Of a DNA stretch of 64,000 bases, positions 24,033-32,934 are shown piece after piece (within the stretch, counting starts at the first letter, position 1; each line of letters opens with the position of its first letter). The DNA comes from Hyphochytrium catenoides (taxonomy: Eukaryota > Protista > Hyphochytriomycota). Position numbers and translations under genes: made by a program. Under the pieces are notes generated by a model. That model was given only the letters and a program-made list of their open reading frames with translations, ran no database searches and was not told where the DNA came from. The stretch covers positions 173,286 through 237,285 of the forward strand of contig FLMG01002456.1 in the NCBI GenBank assembly GCA_900088475.1, in the 5' to 3' direction.

Positions 24033-24905
24033 ATGAGAGCTACAGCTGACTACTCAACTGTACACTCGCCCGTGGAGTCACGGCCAGCGACTGCGGTTGC
24101 CGTGGCCGTTCCCTCAGATGTAGAGGAGCCTCCCTACGATTTGGAGGTTGTCTCTACAGAGCCGGTCGTTTCTGGTTCAGGGTCAGATCGCAGACTGAAG
24201 AAGCTTTGGACGGTTGGCACGCTCATCCTTGCCCTGGGTGCGATAGCAGCAGTGGTAGGAATGACCTCTTTTCATAAGGGATCTTCATCTCAGGATCCAG
24301 CTGCCAGTCCTACATTAGACTCACCGCAGGGAAAGGGCTTGCCACACTCAGGAGAGCACATTGCGATGGACGCCATGATGGAGAATGAAACGGTATTTGA
24401 GGAGTATCAAGAGCACGTTGTCAGAGGCGAGTTCCTAAGTGGTAACCCACCAGCGTTGAACGGTGGAATCGAAGGAGGAAACAGTCCCGGGGTGGCAGAT
24501 TCCGCAGTCGCCGGTGGCGGCCCATCACTCCCGGACTGCACAATCAGCACTTTTCAGAATATAGACATCTGTGAGGGGATGACTCCACAACTTCTTCAGC
24601 AGTTGTTGGATAATGCCGCCACAATACCACAGGCGCCACCCGTACAATCACAACCACCAGGGCTGCCACCTGCGTCGCAGCCTCAAGCGACACCGGCTCC
24701 TGCGCCGGTCCCAACTCCTGTCGTTAGCCGTCCAGGTGGCTCAGCGCCGAATCCCGCGCCTCCTCCTTCTGGAGGAAGCCCCCCTCTTCCACCACCTAAC
24801 TCACCCAGCACCATCTCAGATGGAGTCACATTCCTCACTCTTATATGTAATTGTCTCAAGGGATCAAATGGTGCTGATGATGATTGTACCTGTTTGGCGC
24901 AGTAA
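24033..24905 (+). CDS. Intronless single-pass (type II-like) membrane protein with a Pro-rich stalk and Cys-containing segments
   Basis: 290-aa ORF. RRLKK precedes TM LWTVGTLILALGAIAAVVGM; PAPAPVPTP/PPP region; Cys pairs CTISTFQNIDIC, CNC and CTC. Confidence 0.7.
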   Translation: MRATADYSTVHSPVESRPATAVAVAVPSDVEEPPYDLEVVSTEPVVSGSGSDRRLKKLWTVGTLILALGAIAAVVGMTSFHKGSSSQDPAASPTLDSPQGKGLPHSGEHIAMDAMMENETVFEEYQEHVVRGEFLSGNPPALNGGIEGGNSPGVADSAVAGGGPSLPDCTISTFQNIDICEGMTPQLLQQLLDNAATIPQAPPVQSQPPGLPPASQPQATPAPAPVPTPVVSRPGGSAPNPAPPPSGGSPPLPPPNSPSTISDGVTFLTLICNCLKGSNGADDDCTCLAQ

Positions 24906-25069: not shown

Positions 25070-26901
25070 TCACGCCACGGCACTTTTTGTGGGCTGAACG
25101 ATTACCGAGTGGCCAAGCAGAAGAAAGGTCGACCCCGTCACAAACATAAACCCTAAGAGCTCTGAGCCACAGCGAGCTATAGCTACAAGTAACAGTGTGA
25201 GGATAATAGCTGCGAAAGTGGAGAGAATGTACTCGGACATCTTGGGATGAGCTAAAATGTCCCCATACCGGCTTTTGATCAGCTTGAAGGAGGAATTGAG
25301 TCTGTCCCTGCTCCACCAGGTTTGATAGCTCTCACTTTTGGCGCTTCTTACAGCCATGACATGGGCTGCCATTGCTGAAAAGAGCTTCATATCGGTATTC
25401 ATCCTCTCGAAGTCCATGTGAATGCTATGGATGTAGTCGTAGAGAAGCTCAATAGCATCACCTACAAAGCGGTTGACATAGAACTTGGCAATAGAACTGG
25501 CAAGTCCTGGTATACGGCTTGGAAACTTAAAATCTGCATCAAAGGCTAACATCCATAAGGATGATGACTCTATTTCTGAATTCGTTGGCGTCGTTTTTTT
25601 TCTCGACGCACGACCAGCGTCGTTCCCGGCTGAGCCTTTCTGCAGCCGCAGTGTCATCGAGGCGCTCTCCTCAAATAACTTCTTGATACGTGTGATCGGC
25701 AAGGCTAGGTCCACGAACTTGTCTGCCTTGCTCTCCTGAACCTCTAGCACAGTGCCTCTAAAGCCATAGAGGCTAGATCCCTCTTCAAAATAGGTGACTT
25801 TGACTGTGGTCTCGGCTATTCNNNNNNNNNNNNNNNNNNNNNNNNNNNNNNNNNNNNNNNNNNNNNNNNNNNNNTTCGCTAGTATGAACCTGATCTCGAT
25901 GACGTTATGATCATAAGACAACTCGGCAACCATCCTTGTGTGGTCTTCGTTGAAAACTTGTATCTTGAGCCTTTTCCATAGGTTGAGGTTATCTGCCACA
26001 TTTGGATAATGTTCCTTCATTTCCGGTATATCAAGAGGAAGGTGTAGAGTTAGCGGAGTCCAGCAAGACTCCTCTCCGTTTAGACTTGGCGGAGTAGGCC
26101 TTAGAGGTAAACGGGGGCTTGCCTCTAGTGTCTGCTCACTCTTTGTCTGTCGACCGAAGGCAAATCGTGGCTTTTTCTGCGCTTCCCCAAACAGAGTAAT
26201 CTTCTTGAACTTGACCAGTCGTGTTACAAGCTTGTATGTGCGGGTGAAACGACGTTCAAAAAGCTCTTTCAGTGCCGCGGAATCAGGGTTCTCTTGCAGG
26301 AGCTTCCCCAGCTTCCGAGAGTAATCCGCGATGCTACCAGGTGGAAAGAAGCCATTCAAGCGTAAGCCTAAAGAAAAGAAGCAAGATCAGTTAGAATAGG
26401 TGGCATGTCAAGATACGTGAGTTAAGATCGCCGCAAGGCGCAAGGAAGGCTTACGAAGCTCAACGTCCTGAGTGTTGCAGTCCGTTGGCAGAGGGTAACG
26501 ACCAGCATAGATGGAAGTTGATCCTGCACTGTTGTGACACTCTAACGGAGGGGAGAACCTATCAGCGAAGGCTATGACTGGGTCTTCTTTTTCCCATCGG
26601 TTTCCCTTCACGGCGTAATACTTTACACGCGCAACCACATGGAAGGGGAAAGACGAGTCCTCCCAAAGCCAACGGGCAAAGTCCTCCTAGCAGAGAGAAA
26701 CACCGTATGAAAAACTGATGGAAAACACTCGCGAGGAGTTTGGGAACACATTACCCGTAGCTTGTCTTTCTGTAGGCTTGCTGCCTTCAAAATGAGTGTG
26801 AATGGGGCCAGCAGAAAGACGATGCTTGGGACTATAGGCTCCATATACTGGTTGAAAATCCGGATAAGAACATTTCCGGCTGTCTCTCCTGAGGGTGACA
26901 T
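25070..26901 (-). CDS. Hypothetical protein with C-terminal TM helices (3 exons; spans an N gap)
   Basis: Exons join in frame (DKLR|EDFARWLW; VEL|RLRLNGFF). The last exon is a 429-aa ORF ending in two hydrophobic segments. Confidence 0.65.
25822..25874. other. Assembly gap (N run) within a CDS
   Basis: Run of N characters. Confidence 1.
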
Positions 26902-27582: not shown

Positions 27583-30500
27583 ATGAGCATTCACACTGAA
27601 GCAACCCTTCAGCACGCGAGGGATGAGGTCTGTGGAGATTGGCTTTTGTGCATTCGTTCATAGTGTTCTGATTGCGCTATTCAGGTACTTGCCGCTGCAG
27701 GTGGGCCGGCGTCTACGTTTCTGAAGGATATTGAGGCTGCACGGAACCTTGGCGAGTTCAAAACTGGTGCCAAGGGCAACCGCAGGTTGAGCGCTGAAGA
27801 GATCGAGGCTCTTAAAGCGAATGGAAACTATGGTAGTATCACTGCCACGGCCAGCCGTCTCGTTGATAATTAACCAGCATTTGTCTATTGGCAGCTTCGG
27901 ACTGGAGCAAGGTGTTGGTGCTGCCGGGGCGGAAACTGTTGACCGACCGCATCCGCAACTGCGTGTTTGATGGCAACATCGCTCTTGGTAAGGTGAAGTG
28001 GAGGACTGAACATCCAGAAGTATGACCCTATTGTTCTAAATGTCGCTAGGCTCGTTTTCGGGTCAGATAACACTTCATGGAGTGAGCCTTTCAACCGGTG
28101 TTTACAACTCCACTCTAGCAGAGGTTGTCATTGAAGACAACTGTTTGGTGAAGGTAGGCCCGTTGCAGGCAATTCCGTGGCCTTCTTATAACTGGTGCCT
28201 TTGGCGTGCCCATATATTTGACTGCTAGGACAACACACTTATCGCCAAAACTGTTATCATGACTGGATCAGCGGTCGTTGGCTGTGGGACCATCACCTCA
28301 ACTGGCGCAACTGCCTTCAGTAATGGTATCGAGTTGCCAGTTGGCGTCGAGATCGGAGGCCGAGACATTAAAGTCTGGGCTGAAATGACTTTTGAAGGTG
28401 AAACCTTTGGTCTCTTGCATAATGCGGAAGCTGAGCTCTGAAAGAAGAACGCACTCTACGCAGCTGCGGCAGCAGTTGGAGCCTACAGACAGGACAAAGA
28501 GGCCCTAAAGGCTTACTCTGCTGCTGTCGACAAGTACACCGCTAAAGCGACCTCGAAGGTCAGTCCGCTTCTGTAGAGACCTATTCCGTAAAATGAAAAT
28601 AATCTCCTCAGGATGGAAGTAAGTAAGCTAAACTCTCTATCTTTGCCCGGAACAGTTCAATGTGATATCCCAATCGGCTCGTGTGATCAATGCGCCTCTT
28701 CTAAGAGACGTCTATCTTGGTCCGGCTGGCTCTATTCTTCAATCGGAGGTACAGCGCACCTGTGTCATCTCATCCAAAGAGGTAATGGCCTATGCCAACT
28801 GCTATCATGTTTCGACAGCATGCGGTGTAGGACTCATGTAGACATTGTAGGAACCATCCAGCATCGCTTCAGGCTCCACTGTGAGGGACGCTTTGCTGCA
28901 GTGGGCCACCCATGTTGACAGCCAGAGCATTGTACAGCGCGGGTTTCTCTGTGAGCACTCCCATGTAGAGAGACATGGAAAACTGTTCGATTCCCTTCTA
29001 GGCCCGAACAGCGGTATCGCTGAGGGAGAATGCACATCCAGGTTAGTCCCAACTCCGCATTGCACGATAGGGACTAAGATCTTTCCAACTAAACGTCATC
29101 CTGAATAGCTTTGTCGGCCCATTTGTGGGTTTCCATCACCAGTCCCTCCTCATTGCCAGTTTCTGGCCAAAGGGTAAAGGGAATGTGGGATACGGCGCCA
29201 ATGTTGGCAGCAATCACACCCTAAAGGCACCAGACCAGGTGAGACCACAGTACGGTATCTGGGGTGTGTGATGCGCTGATTGGGCTGCGAGCGCAGGAGC
29301 TATGGCCCGGAGAAGGGGTCTTCTTTGGCCTCTCTACCGCCATCAAGTACCCCAGTAACTTCACTAAAGCACCATACTCAGTCATTGCCACGGGCTGTGT
29401 CACCCTGGCGCAGAGTTGCGAGATGCCCTTCAGGTTCGTGTCCAGTGCCTATCTCGATTAAGACGGCAGTTGCTCACCTGGCCCATCTGTACTACGCAGC
29501 CTTATCAACACACCGGGAGAGTCTATTCCAGGTCTTTCCCCTGCCTTCAACGAAATCTCTCCGGGGTGGGTCCTTTCGGATTGCGCGTTTACTCTCCTTC
29601 GTAATGAAGACAAGTATGCGAATCGTAATAAGGTACCTCAATAACCCCTGGGCTGTTCGTTCTGGTCCGCCCTACATAGCCATGTTATCTTTGCTCCAAT
29701 TATGCACATCTTGGAGACATTTGCTCCAATCCAATGCTCTAGACCTTCCTTCCTTCAAGTGCCTTTAGTGGCGCGCACAGTTTATAGCTGAGGAACTGTG
29801 TATTCCAAGTCCAAAAGGACCAAGATCGCGTGGGAGATCTTTCGGCCGGAGATTGTGGATATGATGCTTAGTGCTAGGAAGCGGTTGATTGAAGCAGAGG
29901 GAAAAGCCAAGATTCACAACGCTCGCAAAGAAGCAGTTTACACCGACAAGGAAGTTCCTGGCCTGGGTAAGAGGGTCATACTGAATTGCAAAACATCTAA
30001 ATCTCATACATTCGTCACCAAAGGGAAGAACTATATGAGAGAGAGCGCCAGGAAGTCGGCGATTGATGCCTACACCTTCTATATCAGACACTATGGATTG
30101 AAGGGCCTTCTCCGTCAAGCTCAGGCAGGAGCATCTCTAAACACTATATTGCTAAAGGGAAGCAAGAGTTGCATTGGGGACCAGAAGCGGTAAGAAGGCC
30201 ACAAGGCTCTTTAATGAGCACACAAAGCCACTGAAAGTGTTCACGTATGCCCTTCTTATAGCTGGAGTCACGAACAGGAGGCCCTTCTGTCTGAGTATCC
30301 TGGCTATACGGCAGAGCAGTTATTGGAAGAAGCAGTCAAGAGCCACGCAGAACTCGCTAAGAGCGCAGGTAAGTTGTTCGTCCATCTCCTACGCCCAATT
30401 TTTTTTTGCCCAGTGCCCATGATGTTCAATATTAGCTCGAGGAAAGTCAAGGGACGATGTGCGAGGTAAACAAATCATCCCTGATTATGACCACACACAT

Positions 30501-30687
30501 ACTGCTGCCTCCAAGGAAAAAGTCGTGATTGCTGCAAACAAGTAAGTCCACTAATTGTAGTATGAGAGATCGCGTTGACTTGCGTTCTACGCCTGATACA
30601 ACTGATCTCTTCTACCATATATTGTTGTCACATAGGTTGGCCGCGGAGCTTGACGTTGCGACAAAGAAGCTCTTGTCGAAGCTCTAG
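27583..30687 (+). CDS. DUF4954-family (left-handed beta-helix / GlmU-like) protein, about 16 exons, C-terminal -SKL
   Basis: Spliced translation: RRLSAEEIEALKANGN.SDWSKV, FSNGIELPVGVEIGGR, LLGPNSGIAEGECTSSFVGPFVGFHHQSLLIASFWPKGKGNVGYGANVGSNHTLKAPDQELWPGEGVFFGL, NEISPGWVL..RNEDKY, SRDDVRGKQIIPDY, ending KKLLSKL*. The family assignment is from recall of these motifs. Confidence 0.8.
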
Positions 30688-30746: not shown

Positions 30747-32398
30747 CTAATGTTCCGCACCATCCGGTGAGCGTTTAGGTTCCATTCCATCTTCATCTGC
30801 GTGACTGAGATCCATGATAGTTAGGTTGCGATAAACGCACTGCACTGAATAGCACTTACTGGGCATCACTCGGCGCATTTCCTTAAAAGTCTCCTTGTTC
30901 ATGTTCTCATACATTTCTCCCAACTTCATCTAGCAAGAGAGGGTTAGTGGGGTTTTCACTGTCTTGTCAAGGGGTGTATCGGTTGTGTCCTCGGTCTACC
31001 TGCAACTCATCCTCAGCCATCTTGATATTATCGCAAACTGCTTTGGCAAAAGCTTTGACCTTGCATAATAAGTTAGCGAAACTTTAGTGCTCTGACAGCC
31101 AATTCGAGAACGCATGACCTTACATCGGTAGACTGCACTGAGAGCGGAGAGGATAGTTTCCTCGAGGTGTGAAGCTGGACATTTCCATCCTCAAAGTAGT
31201 GGACATGGAGCCGTATCTGGCCTGATAAGGCCCGACGGCTAATGTCCACAGACCAGTCTGAGCTCCAGTTACCACTCCTGTGAGCAGAAAGATGACATGC
31301 GACCATTTAAGAAGAGTGTCCGCGGCGAAGAGAAGACGGCCCCCACCTACCAATAGTTCCTAAGGTTAACGCTCACGCCGGATATAAGTATTTGAAGTTG
31401 ATCCTGGCGAGCTAGAACGCTTAGGCCTGCCCTGAGAAGACGGTCGGTGGGTGAAGGTTAAGTTCTGATGCCTGACTGAAGACGAAGATCACTCTTTTTA
31501 CTTTTCTCCGTATGCGAGGTGCACATATTCCACCAGAGCGTCCTCTACTGCCACTCTGGCCAAGCAAAGGGTAGATCCGATGGGAAGACCGGGGAGATGC
31601 AATGTAGGAGTTCCCCGAAGGCGCAGTTACAAAAGAAAGAGAAGAGGGTTAACAAGGTGCTACTATCTACAAAAAGCAACCGTGAGCAAACTGAATCCCC
31701 GAGAGCTCCAGGGATAGATAGACCGAACTCATGTGCGCTGTATCGGCTGGAAAGGTAGAATACATTCCAACTTTGAAGGGAGAGTACCTCAGCGTTTCAT
31801 GAGCGCTATCCATCTGCGTTGTGACGGGTTGCCCATCATCTACCACTAACCTCTGCCATAAAAGTCAAGCATTTTCGTGCGCAGAGGAAAAAGCACCACG
31901 GCTTAATCACTAGCTTCAAGTTAAGCAATTGAATAAACGTACCTGCCTTAGGTGATCGAACTGATAGATTTTCTTTGTTCTAGAGTCAATATAGTGAGTC
32001 GGGTCGAGCTCTGTAGCTTTCGAGATCACAAGCTGGGAGGAAGAGGGTTAGACCAGTCATCCCTTGTGTCCATTGGTCTACTTGATACGTGGACGATAGT
32101 TGGAGCTCCAGCTCACCCTCGTGTCAGATCCCGTTACGGCTACTGGCAGGTAGCTCTCTGTATTATATTGCCGAAGGATTCCGGCGACGACAGGCTCGGT
32201 CAGGATTTCGGCTGGGACCAACTTCTTGAGATCTGGAGTGGAGTATAACGTATTGTTGTCAGGACATTTAGACGTATGAGAAGAGCATTTGGTCTGACCG
32301 GTAAGCACTTCCTTCACCTGGCCAGCAGGAGAGGAGATTAGGAGATGCTGGGCGATCTTGAGCTTCTCTTCATCGGTGATCTCTTCCACGTCCGCCAT
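30747..32398 (-). CDS. CAPZA: F-actin capping protein subunit alpha (multi-exon)
   Basis: EEKLKIAQHLLISSPAGQVKEVL, NLRNYWSGNWSSDWS, LHVHYFEDGNVQL, YENMNKETFKEMRRVMP, KMEWN. Confidence 0.95.
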
Positions 32399-32934
32399 GG
32401 TCTTTTTAAACAACGTCCCAACCCTTGAAACACAAGTCCTGCTCACGCTCGATCCTCCCACTTCCTGCTTGTATGTCCAGCCTCGGCACCACTATTGTTG
32501 ACTGACGAAGGTCCTTTGCGTCTGGTTGGTAGGTCACGAGACGACATCAACTGTCTTCAATGAGAACCAAATAATCCTCGCGCCTTTTATCACATCAATT
32601 AGCATATTGCACGGTACAACAGATCTTTGTTCTTGTACGTTGTACCTCGTGGATTTACCATAGAATCTATAGTGTGGCCTGTATTCGTAGGATACAGTAC
32701 GACGTGACAGCACAGTTGTATCAAAGTGAAATGACCAGAGGCTCTTGGACAGACACTGCTCAAACTGATATCCCAGTCTGTCAGACCAGACCTTGCCCTG
32801 CAGTCCTGCAGCACTTCATTCGGCACTGATGCTGGCACTTCTAACATCTATAAGCAAGGTCATCGCTTGACCCGCGGGAAGAGCACTGTGGTGTCCGTGT
32901 TAAGTTTGAACCTCATTGTTATCCCTAGCTTACA

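What the first reader, a model, noticed from the sequence alone, without database searches (positions are those of the whole stretch)
27583..30687. Bacterial-type DUF4954 beta-helix protein ends in the peroxisomal signal -SKL, visible only after splicing
Seen: the final join AAC AA|GTAAGT...CATAG|G TTG gives ...SRDDVRGKQIIPDY...LDVATKKLLSKL*, with the stop at 30685-30687. The ORF track misses this. Established: C-terminal SKL preceded by basic residues is the canonical PTS1. DUF4954 has no known function, is known mainly from bacteria, and resembles hexapeptide acyl/nucleotidyl transferases. Inference: an uncharacterised enzyme of probable bacterial origin, now with about 15 introns, retargeted to peroxisomes, which would point to an undescribed peroxisomal pathway.
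Basis: partly seen in the sequence, partly recalled or inferred. Interest (0 to 1): 0.72.

Follow-up and report, generated by a model that had tools for sequence, protein, structure and literature searches.

The report
Peroxisome-tagged DUF4954 beta-helix enzyme gene
An intron-rich protist gene encodes a complete enzyme of an uncharacterised, mostly bacterial family that ends in the peroxisome-import signal -SKL; eukaryotic relatives keep similar endings, and bacterial gene neighbourhoods tie the family to glucosamine-6-phosphate metabolism.

Summary
27583-30687 (+) splices through 15 GT-AG introns into one 652-residue frame ending ...KKLLSKL*. The last join is backed by homology: a metagenomic relative (P0340) reads VVVAARKLAAELQQLVSKL across the junction, against VVIAANKLAAEL...LLSKL here. 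No RNA run was listed.

The protein is a full-length DUF4954 left-handed beta-helix protein, 48-52% identical to oomycete and Planctomycetota members. It sits in a single eukaryotic clade (support 98-99) with oomycetes, labyrinthulomycetes and a choanoflagellate.

In that clade, 17/54 proteins end in canonical [SAC][KRH][LM] and 36/54 in PTS1-like tripeptides. For bacterial relatives the figures are 13/180 and 25/180.

One caveat: bacterial homologs end at the same helix position, often in -AKL/-ARL/-SKL. The signal therefore looks pre-adapted rather than newly added, and localisation is untested.

New here: in 52 of 80 bacterial species, nagB (glucosamine-6-P deaminase) lies directly upstream of DUF4954. 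Giant ORFs fuse a GlmS-like module to it. The fold is closest to amino-sugar N-acyltransferases (YdcK, QdtC, GlmU). My best reading is a peroxisomal enzyme acting on GlcN-6-P/GlcNAc-6-P.

The joined protein model was used only in local scripts and was never sent to a search or fold tool. Another note of this scan reports a separate bacterial-type gene with -SKL in this genome.

The parts
27583..27627 (+). exon 1 with start codon (MSIHTEATLQHARDE)
   Evidence: The N-terminus aligns from residue 1 with bacterial P0165. No added presequence.
27685..28558 (+). exons 2-6 (27685-27832, 27895-27987, 28050-28153, 28229-28397, 28464-28558): N-terminal helices and the first turns of the beta-helix
   Evidence: model. 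Exon-level Pfam DUF4954 hits at profile positions 18-53 and 88-138. tblastn is colinear.
28656..29632 (+). exons 7-11 (28656-28781, 28851-29041, 29109-29238, 29297-29433, 29500-29632): the conserved core carrying the family's near-invariant motifs (EHSHVERHGK, GE.T, GPFVGFHHQ, WP.GKGNVGYGANVGSNHT, APDQE, PGEG)
   Evidence: Column conservation in A2. Exon 9 is 73-86% identical to homologs. phmmer of exon 8 gave 179 hits.
29810..30541 (+). exons 12-15 (29810-29966, 30024-30189, 30262-30368, 30436-30541): C-terminal helical domain
   Evidence: AlphaFold model of homolog P0340: helices 434-646.
30542..30635 (+). last intron (94 nt, GTAAGT...CATAG, phase 2). If retained, the frame stops at TAA 30543-30545.
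30636..30687 (+). exon 16: the last base of a Lys codon, then LAAELDVATKKLLSKL and TAG. The PTS1 tripeptide SKL is at 30676-30684.
   Evidence: Homology across the junction to P0340 and to oomycete C-termini.
30747..32461 (-). convergent neighbour: F-actin capping protein alpha subunit (several exons). It bounds the 3' end of the gene.
   Evidence: PF01267, E 1.1e-15 for 31073-31306

Best explanation
This is a functional nuclear gene of an oomycete-related protist. It encodes a 652-residue enzyme of the DUF4954 family: a long left-handed beta-helix followed by a helical domain. The gene shares a single origin with the copies in oomycetes, labyrinthulomycetes and a choanoflagellate, and that eukaryotic clade is nested among bacterial sequences. 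It has been resident long enough to acquire 15 introns. Two of these appear to sit at the same positions as introns in Saprolegnia; those positions are approximate and the phase was not checked. After splicing, the protein ends in -KKLLSKL, a strong type-1 peroxisomal targeting signal. I infer that PEX5 imports it into the peroxisome matrix. The signal occupies the natural end of the family's C-terminal helix, which in bacteria often reads -LLAKL or similar. Import therefore needed little or no change after transfer, and was then maintained by selection, since eukaryotic tails vary but stay within S/A/P-K/R-L/M. For the chemistry, I infer an amino-sugar acyl(acetyl)transferase-type enzyme that changes the acetylation state of glucosamine-6-phosphate (GlcN-6-P <-> GlcNAc-6-P). 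The direction is unresolved. Shown here: the gene model, family membership, PTS1-like ends in orthologs, the nagB linkage in bacteria, and the fold class. Inferred: import, substrate and reaction. My estimates: gene model about 0.95; terminal exon about 0.9; import about 0.65; hexosamine-phosphate link about 0.6; acetyltransferase specifically about 0.35.
For: Gene model and stop. Colinear tblastn of DUF4954-certified homologs (Pfam E 1e-26 to 1e-59). Local BLASTP gives 48-52% identity over about 600-655 columns. Junction homology (P0340, oomycetes). Eukaryotic clade: FastTree support 98-99 and IQ-TREE SH-aLRT 99. Named members are Hondaea, Aphanomyces, Saprolegnia, Phytophthora, Pythium, Lagenidium and Diaphanoeca. 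Saprolegnia's copy is a spliced gene next to PRP8. PTS1 enrichment: canonical 17/54 vs 13/180 (Fisher p 1.9e-5) and extended 36/54 vs 25/180 (p 2e-13). Final residue is L/M in 41/54 vs L in 45/180. All near-invariant family residues are present in the window's exons 8-10. Bacterial context: nagB lies directly upstream on the same strand in 52/80 species loci and within the flank in 60/80; a NagC-like ROK regulator occurs in 13, nagA in only 2, glmS in 3. NagB identity is above the TIGR00502 cut-off. Single giant ORFs fuse GATase+SIS (GlmS-like) to DUF4954, beside GH94, ROK, PGM_PMM and NTP-transferase modules. Fold: the AlphaFold model of P0340 has pLDDT 96.6. Best matches are YdcK (Z 21.6, 268 residues), QdtC (Z 18.4), GlmU acetyltransferase domain (Z about 18) and LpxA/LpxD (Z about 15-16) (Foldseek). 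Precedent for hexosamine enzymes in peroxisome-type organelles: PMC7909634, PMC2414269.
Against: No RNA run was available to confirm the last splice. No localisation data exist. The C-terminal helix is modelled as ordered up to the last residue in the homolog, and PEX5 needs an accessible end. Seven percent of bacterial relatives also end in canonical tripeptides at the same position, so -SKL alone is weak evidence. Phytophthora and Peronospora end in -ARV, and several members have non-PTS1 ends, some probably through annotation errors. No nag gene lies near the eukaryotic copies. The alignment to GlmU's catalytic region is short and weak (hhalign probability 57%, His off by one). Operon logic (a nagC-nagB partner without nagA) would fit a deacetylase, whereas the fold and the GlmS fusions fit an acetyltransferase. 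The window's own joined protein was never scored against Pfam or folded.
Confidence: 0.55

Rival explanations
1. The protein is cytosolic. The -SKL is only the inherited end of the family's C-terminal amphipathic helix, packed against the protein and not read by PEX5.
For: Bacterial homologs have the same modal tail length (34 residues after the D-D-x-R-G anchor) and often end -LLAKL, -LLARL, -ILSRL or even -LLSKL followed by a few residues. The last helix of the modelled homolog is ordered, with pLDDT about 91. The window's tail has no flexible linker before SKL.
Against: Eukaryotic members are 4-5 times richer in PTS1-type ends than bacterial ones. These ends occur in many separate sublineages, with the tripeptide varying inside the PTS1 alphabet (SKL, AKL, ARL, ARM, SRL, PRL, PKL, SNL, SSL). 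Several have Pro/Gly/Ser linkers before it. No acidic residue occurs in the last nine positions of the window's protein.
Confidence: 0.25
2. The annotated last splice is not the main form, or not the only one. Retention of the 94-nt intron gives a protein ending ...AANK without the last helix and without PTS1, so the gene yields a cytosolic or dual-localised product.
For: The unspliced frame stops immediately. No RNA data could be obtained. Other notes of this scan suggest splice-dependent PTS1 choices elsewhere in this genome (unchecked).
Against: The donor is a consensus GTAAGT and the acceptor a pyrimidine-rich CATAG. The helix encoded by exon 16 is present in all full-length homologs, bacterial and eukaryotic, so a truncated form would lack a conserved structural element.
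Confidence: 0.1
3. The enzyme is peroxisomal but unrelated to hexosamine metabolism in eukaryotes. For example, it could be an acyl-CoA-dependent acyltransferase using peroxisomal acyl-CoA on another acceptor. Alternatively it could be a NagA-like GlcNAc-6-P deacetylase built on a beta-helix with a His/Asp/Glu metal site.
For: Eukaryotic copies are not clustered with nag genes. The family has an unusually dense set of invariant His/Glu/Asp/Asn residues (H331, H332, H358, D364, E318, E366, E371 in P0340 numbering), more than typical hexapeptide acetyltransferases. nagA is missing next to nagB-DUF4954 (2/80), and acetate kinase is adjacent in 6/80 loci.
Against: No beta-helix amidohydrolase is known (my own knowledge). 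All close fold neighbours are amino-sugar acyltransferases. GlmS-like fusions fit a consumer, not a producer, of GlcN-6-P.
Confidence: 0.3

Closest known systems
DUF4954 (Pfam PF16314) proteins of oomycetes, e.g. Saprolegnia parasitica SPRG_11090, Aphanomyces spp., Pythium oligandrum, Lagenidium giganteum
   Same: Orthologs. They are about 50% identical over the full length, of the same length and domain order, in the same eukaryotic clade, are spliced nuclear genes, and have PTS1-like ends (-PRL, -SKL, -AKL).
   Different: The window's gene has many more introns (15). Its tail is the canonical -SKL rather than -PRL or -ARV. The oomycete proteins are annotated only as 'DUF4954 domain-containing', with no function or location given.
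Bacterial DUF4954 family proteins (Planctomycetota, Omnitrophota, Latescibacterota, Sumerlaeota, Spirochaetota and others)
   Same: 47-50% identical end to end. They share the same motifs and the same C-terminal helix ending at the same position, sometimes in -AKL or -SKL.
   Different: They have no introns and are usually the gene after nagB in an operon. In bacteria the tail cannot be a peroxisomal signal.
GlmU C-terminal domain, QdtC, LpxA/LpxD, YdcK (left-handed beta-helix amino-sugar acyltransferases)
   Same: The beta-helix core superposes (Z 15-21.6, 180-268 residues). There are weak Pfam hits to Hexapep_GlmU. GlmU's substrate is a glucosamine phosphate, as the bacterial context suggests here.
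   Different: Only 6-19% identity. DUF4954 is about 650 residues with a long conserved loop region and a helical C-terminal domain that have no counterpart. The catalytic His correspondence is not established. No nucleotidyltransferase domain is present.
Glycosomal hexosamine/sugar-nucleotide enzymes of Trypanosoma brucei (GNA1, UAP and others)
   Same: They are a precedent for GlcN-6-P/GlcNAc-phosphate enzymes inside peroxisome-derived organelles, some through PTS1 (PMC7909634, PMC2414269).
   Different: They belong to unrelated protein families (GNAT fold for GNA1). Kinetoplastid glycosomes are a special case. Nothing comparable is described for stramenopiles, as far as my searches reached.
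Other bacterial-origin enzymes with PTS1 in this same genome (scan note s1-349974, Bacteroidetes-type malate dehydrogenase with -SKL)
   Same: The same pattern: a bacterial-type gene with introns and a C-terminal SKL.
   Different: That enzyme has a known function. I did not check that note.

Membership tests
DUF4954 (PF16314) | Significant match to the family profile | tested here: inconclusive
   Exon by exon, there are only sub-threshold hits (E 0.0017 and 0.036, colinear profile positions; gathering score 26.2 not reached). The joined protein was not scanned, because a spliced model has no reference.
DUF4954 (PF16314) | Full-length, colinear homology to proteins that pass the Pfam threshold | tested here: met
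   Homologs score E 1e-26 to 1e-59 on PF16314 and map onto all exons in order. Local BLASTP gives 48-52% identity over about 600-655 columns.
DUF4954 (PF16314) | Family's near-invariant motifs (E/H-rich strand, GE.T, GFHHQ, WP.G.GN..YGAN.GSNHT, DQE, GEG) | tested here: met
   All are present in the translation of exons 8-10, judged against column counts in the 150-sequence alignment A2.
PTS1-targeted peroxisomal matrix protein | C-terminal tripeptide [SAC][KRH][LM] | tested here: met
   -SKL* at 30676-30687 after splicing.
PTS1-targeted peroxisomal matrix protein | Favourable upstream context (basic or hydrophobic, no acidic residues close to the end) | tested here: met
   ...DVATKKLLSKL: Lys at positions -6 and -7 and no acidic residue in the last nine. 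This is a rule of thumb from established PTS1 work; no predictor was run.
PTS1-targeted peroxisomal matrix protein | Signal conserved in orthologs of other peroxisome-bearing species | tested here: met
   17/54 canonical and 36/54 PTS1-like ends in the eukaryotic clade, against 13/180 and 25/180 in bacteria. Exceptions are Phytophthora -ARV and some doubtful gene models. The counts are not phylogenetically independent.
PTS1-targeted peroxisomal matrix protein | Terminal exon used in mature mRNA | not testable with these tools
   No RNA run was listed for this stretch. Only homology supports the exon.
PTS1-targeted peroxisomal matrix protein | PEX5 binding and organelle localisation; PEX5 present in the organism | not testable with these tools
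   No experiment was possible and the rest of the genome is not readable from this window. Other scan notes mention PTS1 proteins in this genome but are unchecked.
Hexapeptide (left-handed beta-helix) amino-sugar acetyltransferases (GlmU-C type) | Left-handed beta-helix fold superposable on the acetyltransferase domain | tested here: met
   Tested for homolog P0340 (pLDDT 96.6): GlmU Z about 18, rmsd about 3.8 over about 200 residues; YdcK Z 21.6.
Hexapeptide (left-handed beta-helix) amino-sugar acetyltransferases (GlmU-C type) | Catalytic His and acetyl-CoA site in equivalent positions | tested here: inconclusive
   hhalign of A2 vs E. coli GlmU gives 23 columns at probability 57%. The conserved His300 (129/150) falls one residue from GlmU His363.
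Gene acquired from bacteria (horizontal transfer) | Eukaryotic sequences form one clade nested in bacterial diversity, with patchy eukaryotic distribution | tested here: met
   One side of a branch, SH-aLRT 99; FastTree support 98-99. Thousands of bacterial members contrast with a few protist lineages. The root and direction are inferred from distribution, not shown.

The most novel reading that the evidence does not exclude
DUF4954 is a missing, non-orthologous enzyme of hexosamine metabolism: a beta-helix enzyme that interconverts GlcN-6-P and GlcNAc-6-P, replacing NagA or GNA1/GlmU-C. Stramenopiles and some other protists took it from bacteria together with a ready-made PTS1 and run this step inside peroxisomes. 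That would be a peroxisomal hexosamine branch outside the kinetoplastid glycosome.
Probability: 0.25. Interest if true: 0.75.

Novelty: new member of a known kind. Interest (0 to 1): 0.55.

Why it matters
DUF4954 is a large, strongly conserved family (thousands of bacterial members and several protist lineages). It has no solved structure and no assigned function, and it was named in only two papers of the searched library, neither of which appears to be about its function. This window shows a clean eukaryotic copy whose peroxisomal signal appears only after splicing. Following it up gave two testable leads. First, PTS1-like ends are conserved across the eukaryotic clade, which predicts an unlisted peroxisomal matrix enzyme in oomycetes (including crop and fish pathogens), thraustochytrids and a choanoflagellate. 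Second, there is a very tight nagB-DUF4954 gene pair across about a dozen bacterial phyla, plus GlmS-like fusions, which gives a concrete substrate hypothesis for assays. It is also a neat case of a bacterial C-terminus that already resembled a eukaryotic targeting signal before transfer.

Tried and rejected
- Exon-by-exon Pfam scans gave only two sub-threshold DUF4954 hits and one Hexapep_GlmU hit. Family membership therefore had to be shown through homologs.
- RNA evidence: no run was listed, so read laying could not be used.
- A profile search of the PDB by sequence found no DUF4954 structure, only weak beta-helix similarity to eIF2B gamma/epsilon, gamma-carbonic anhydrases and GlmU.
- An early guess that the genome was an alveolate, prompted by a 'GAP50-like' note, was dropped. 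The gene is sister to oomycete orthologs.
- I looked for nagB, ROK or GlcNAc-epimerase homologs in the window and found none. The neighbours of the Saprolegnia and picoeukaryote copies show no metabolic cluster.
- Large ORFs at 24033-24905 and 25070-26359 have no Pfam match.
- Findings look-ups for peroxin, glucosamine, acetylglucosamine and DUF4954 gave nothing usable.
- Literature searches for a non-orthologous NagA or a beta-helix partner of nagB found nothing on this family.
- Left out by rule: the joined 652-aa model was not sent to Pfam, the protein databases, the PDB search or structure prediction. It was built from window coordinates inside scripts and compared only with sequences already fetched.
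Full report
**Observation**

The stretch 27583-30687 (+) was read directly. The mechanical ORF list shows only fragments. Three-frame translation and splicing by coordinates give 16 exons joined by 15 GT..AG introns of 57-177 nt, a 1959-nt coding sequence and a 652-residue protein with no internal stop.

Exon 15 ends ...GCA AAC AA at 30541. The intron starts GTAAGT and ends CACATAG at 30635. Exon 16 starts with G TTG. The frame ends ...ATKKLLSKL, with SKL at 30676-30684 and TAG at 30685-30687. Without this splice the frame stops at TAA 30543-30545 and the protein would end ...AANK.

**Is the model right?**

No RNA run was listed for this stretch, so support comes from homology.

- A phmmer search with exon 8 by reference (window:28851-29105) found 179 proteins. 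Most are 600-700 residues and match at the expected position.
- Ten of them were scanned and pass Pfam DUF4954 at E 1e-26 to 1e-59.
- Six full-length homologs laid on the window by tblastn hit the exons in order. Query coordinates are contiguous across every intron, including the long intron 11 and the in-frame intron 12.
- Every homolog continues 17-27 residues beyond the part that matches exon 15. A protein stopping at ...AANK would therefore lack a conserved element.
- The metagenomic relative P0340 reads VVVAARKLAAELQQLVSKL where the window reads VVIAAN|KLAAEL...LLSKL. The homology runs straight across the last junction.
- The next gene, F-actin capping protein alpha on the minus strand, ends about 60 nt after the stop.

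**Handling of the joined model**

It exists only in scripts, built from window coordinates and compared with sequences already fetched.

**What the protein is**

Exon-level Pfam hits to DUF4954 are sub-threshold but colinear. The joined model is 48-52% identical over about 600-655 columns to oomycete proteins and to Planctomycetota proteins alike. All near-invariant family residues are present in exons 8-10.

AlphaFold2 was run on the close homolog P0340 with a 150-sequence alignment. It gives a very confident model (pLDDT 96.6, pTM 0.94): N-terminal helices, a long left-handed beta-helix, a conserved loop-rich segment and a C-terminal helical domain whose last helix runs to the penultimate residue.

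No DUF4954 structure is in the PDB by sequence. By fold, the best matches are:

- the uncharacterised acetyltransferase-like YdcK (Z 21.6, 268 residues);
- QdtC (Z 18.4);
- the GlmU acetyltransferase domain (Z about 18);
- LpxA/LpxD (Z about 15-16).

Apart from the uncharacterised YdcK, these are amino-sugar acyltransferases. A profile alignment to E. coli GlmU is short and weak (probability 57%). It places the conserved His300 one residue from GlmU's catalytic His363, which is suggestive only.

**Relatives and origin**

Word-index searches returned over a thousand relatives. Most are bacterial: Planctomycetota, Omnitrophota, Latescibacterota, Sumerlaeota, Hydrogenedentota and Spirochaetota.

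Named eukaryotic members are many oomycetes, the thraustochytrid Hondaea, an MMETSP labyrinthulomycete-like transcriptome and the choanoflagellate Diaphanoeca grandis. There are also marine contigs with eukaryote-type neighbours such as RING fingers and cytochrome b561.

In FastTree trees of 203 and 234 rows, these sequences and the window's protein form one clade with support 98-99. In an IQ-TREE run on 94 rows, the 40 eukaryotic rows are one side of a branch with SH-aLRT 99. The window's protein is sister to the oomycete group. This agrees with another agent's note that the genome belongs to an oomycete-related protist.

The Saprolegnia ortholog is a spliced gene next to PRP8. Two of its intron positions appear to coincide with window introns 5 and 13 (positions approximate, phase not checked). 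The gene therefore seems to have been nuclear and interrupted before these lineages split.

A bacterial origin is the economical reading of the distribution. The root and the donor are not shown.

**The signal**

Within the eukaryotic clade:

- 17 of 54 proteins end in [SAC][KRH][LM];
- 36 of 54 end in a wider PTS1-like pattern (-PRL in all Saprolegniales, -PKL, -SNL, -SSL, -ARM and so on).

Outside the clade the figures are 13 of 180 and 25 of 180 (Fisher p 1.9e-5 and 2e-13). These counts are not phylogenetically independent, but PTS1-like ends occur in at least nine sublineages. The last residue is L or M in 41/54 eukaryotic rows. It is L in 45/180 bacterial rows.

There is one twist. Bacterial proteins end at the same place: the modal tail is 34 residues after the D-D-x-R-G anchor in both groups, and 34 in the window. 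They often read -LLAKL, -LLARL or -ILSRL, and some contain -LLSKL followed by a few residues. The signal was thus nearly ready-made in the donor family.

The same fact weakens -SKL as evidence on its own. So does the ordered terminal helix in the model. I put peroxisomal import at about 0.65.

**Function**

Six bacterial loci were inspected first. Five, from five phyla, have a glucosamine-6-phosphate deaminase gene next to DUF4954, directly upstream on the same strand in four. Three also have a NagC/Mlc-like ROK regulator. The deaminases pass the NagB equivalog cut-off (TIGR00502).

A scan of one genome per species returned 80 loci. tblastn with E. coli and locus-derived queries gave these counts:

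| Neighbour | Loci (of 80) |
|---|---|
| nagB, same strand, 60-404 nt upstream | 52 |
| nagB anywhere in the flank | 60 |
| NagC-like ROK regulator | 13 |
| acetate kinase | 6 |
| glmS | 3 |
| nagA | 2 |

Two giant single ORFs (2641 and 3342 residues) in uncultured bacterial assemblies (Planctomycetia in one case) fuse a GATase+SIS (GlmS-like) module to DUF4954. They sit beside GH94 phosphorylase, ROK, and a second giant ORF with NTP-transferase and PGM_PMM modules.

Everything points to the GlcN-6-P node. The fold class and the GlmS fusions favour N-acetyl transfer to GlcN-6-P. The nagC-nagB context without nagA favours a NagA-like role. I cannot decide between them.

Hexosamine enzymes inside peroxisome-derived organelles are documented only for trypanosome glycosomes (PMC7909634, PMC2414269). 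The library holds two papers that even mention DUF4954, and neither appears to be about its function.

**Verdict**

Two corrections apply: the signal looks inherited rather than added, and localisation is unproven.

The gene is a new member of a known but uncharacterised family. The added value is the ortholog-wide PTS1 pattern and the nagB linkage, which together give a testable hypothesis.

Noticed in passing
L015-L094 (bacterial loci), e.g. L032:8001-9854 with nagB ending 91 nt upstream: A nagB-DUF4954 gene pair is conserved across about a dozen bacterial phyla (52/80 species loci directly adjacent on the same strand). nagA is almost never nearby (2/80). Acetate kinase is adjacent in 6 loci. 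This points to an unassigned step of amino-sugar metabolism.
   Followed up: partly
L011:5001-15029 and L012:5001-12926: Single uninterrupted ORFs of 3342 and 2641 residues in uncultured bacterial assemblies (L011's contig is labelled Planctomycetia) fuse GATase/SIS (GlmS-like) modules to a DUF4954 domain. Each is followed by another giant ORF (at least 4734 and 1958 residues) with NTP-transferase, mannitol-dehydrogenase-like and PGM_PMM modules. Each is preceded by a GH94 phosphorylase and a ROK protein.
   Followed up: partly
window 30747-32461 (-): An F-actin capping protein alpha subunit gene in several exons, convergent with the DUF4954 gene. The two stop codons are only about 60 nt apart.
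   Followed up: partly
window 29967-30023: Intron 12 is 57 nt, in frame and free of stop codons. Retention would insert 19 residues that homologs lack.
   Followed up: no
window introns 5 (28398-28463) and 13 (30190-30261) vs L014:10001-12496: Two intron positions appear to be shared with the Saprolegnia parasitica ortholog. Positions were mapped through tblastn and a pairwise alignment, and the phase was not checked base by base.
   Followed up: partly
P0240 (EukProt transcriptome protein): A protein labelled eukaryotic groups inside a Planctomycetota clade and ends -NAPA. It is probably bacterial contamination of a transcriptome, or else a separate transfer.
   Followed up: no
window 24033-24905 (+) and 25070-26359 (-): Long ORFs of 290 and 429 residues upstream of the gene have no Pfam match at E 0.01.
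   Followed up: no
P0324-P0326, P0029, P0331 (Phytophthora, Peronospora): Peronosporales orthologs share a conserved -AAFVARV end rather than a canonical PTS1, while Pythium oligandrum (-SKL), Lagenidium (-AKL) and an unnamed sequence grouping with them (P0358, -ARM) keep one. This may be a weakening or loss of targeting in that lineage.
   Followed up: no
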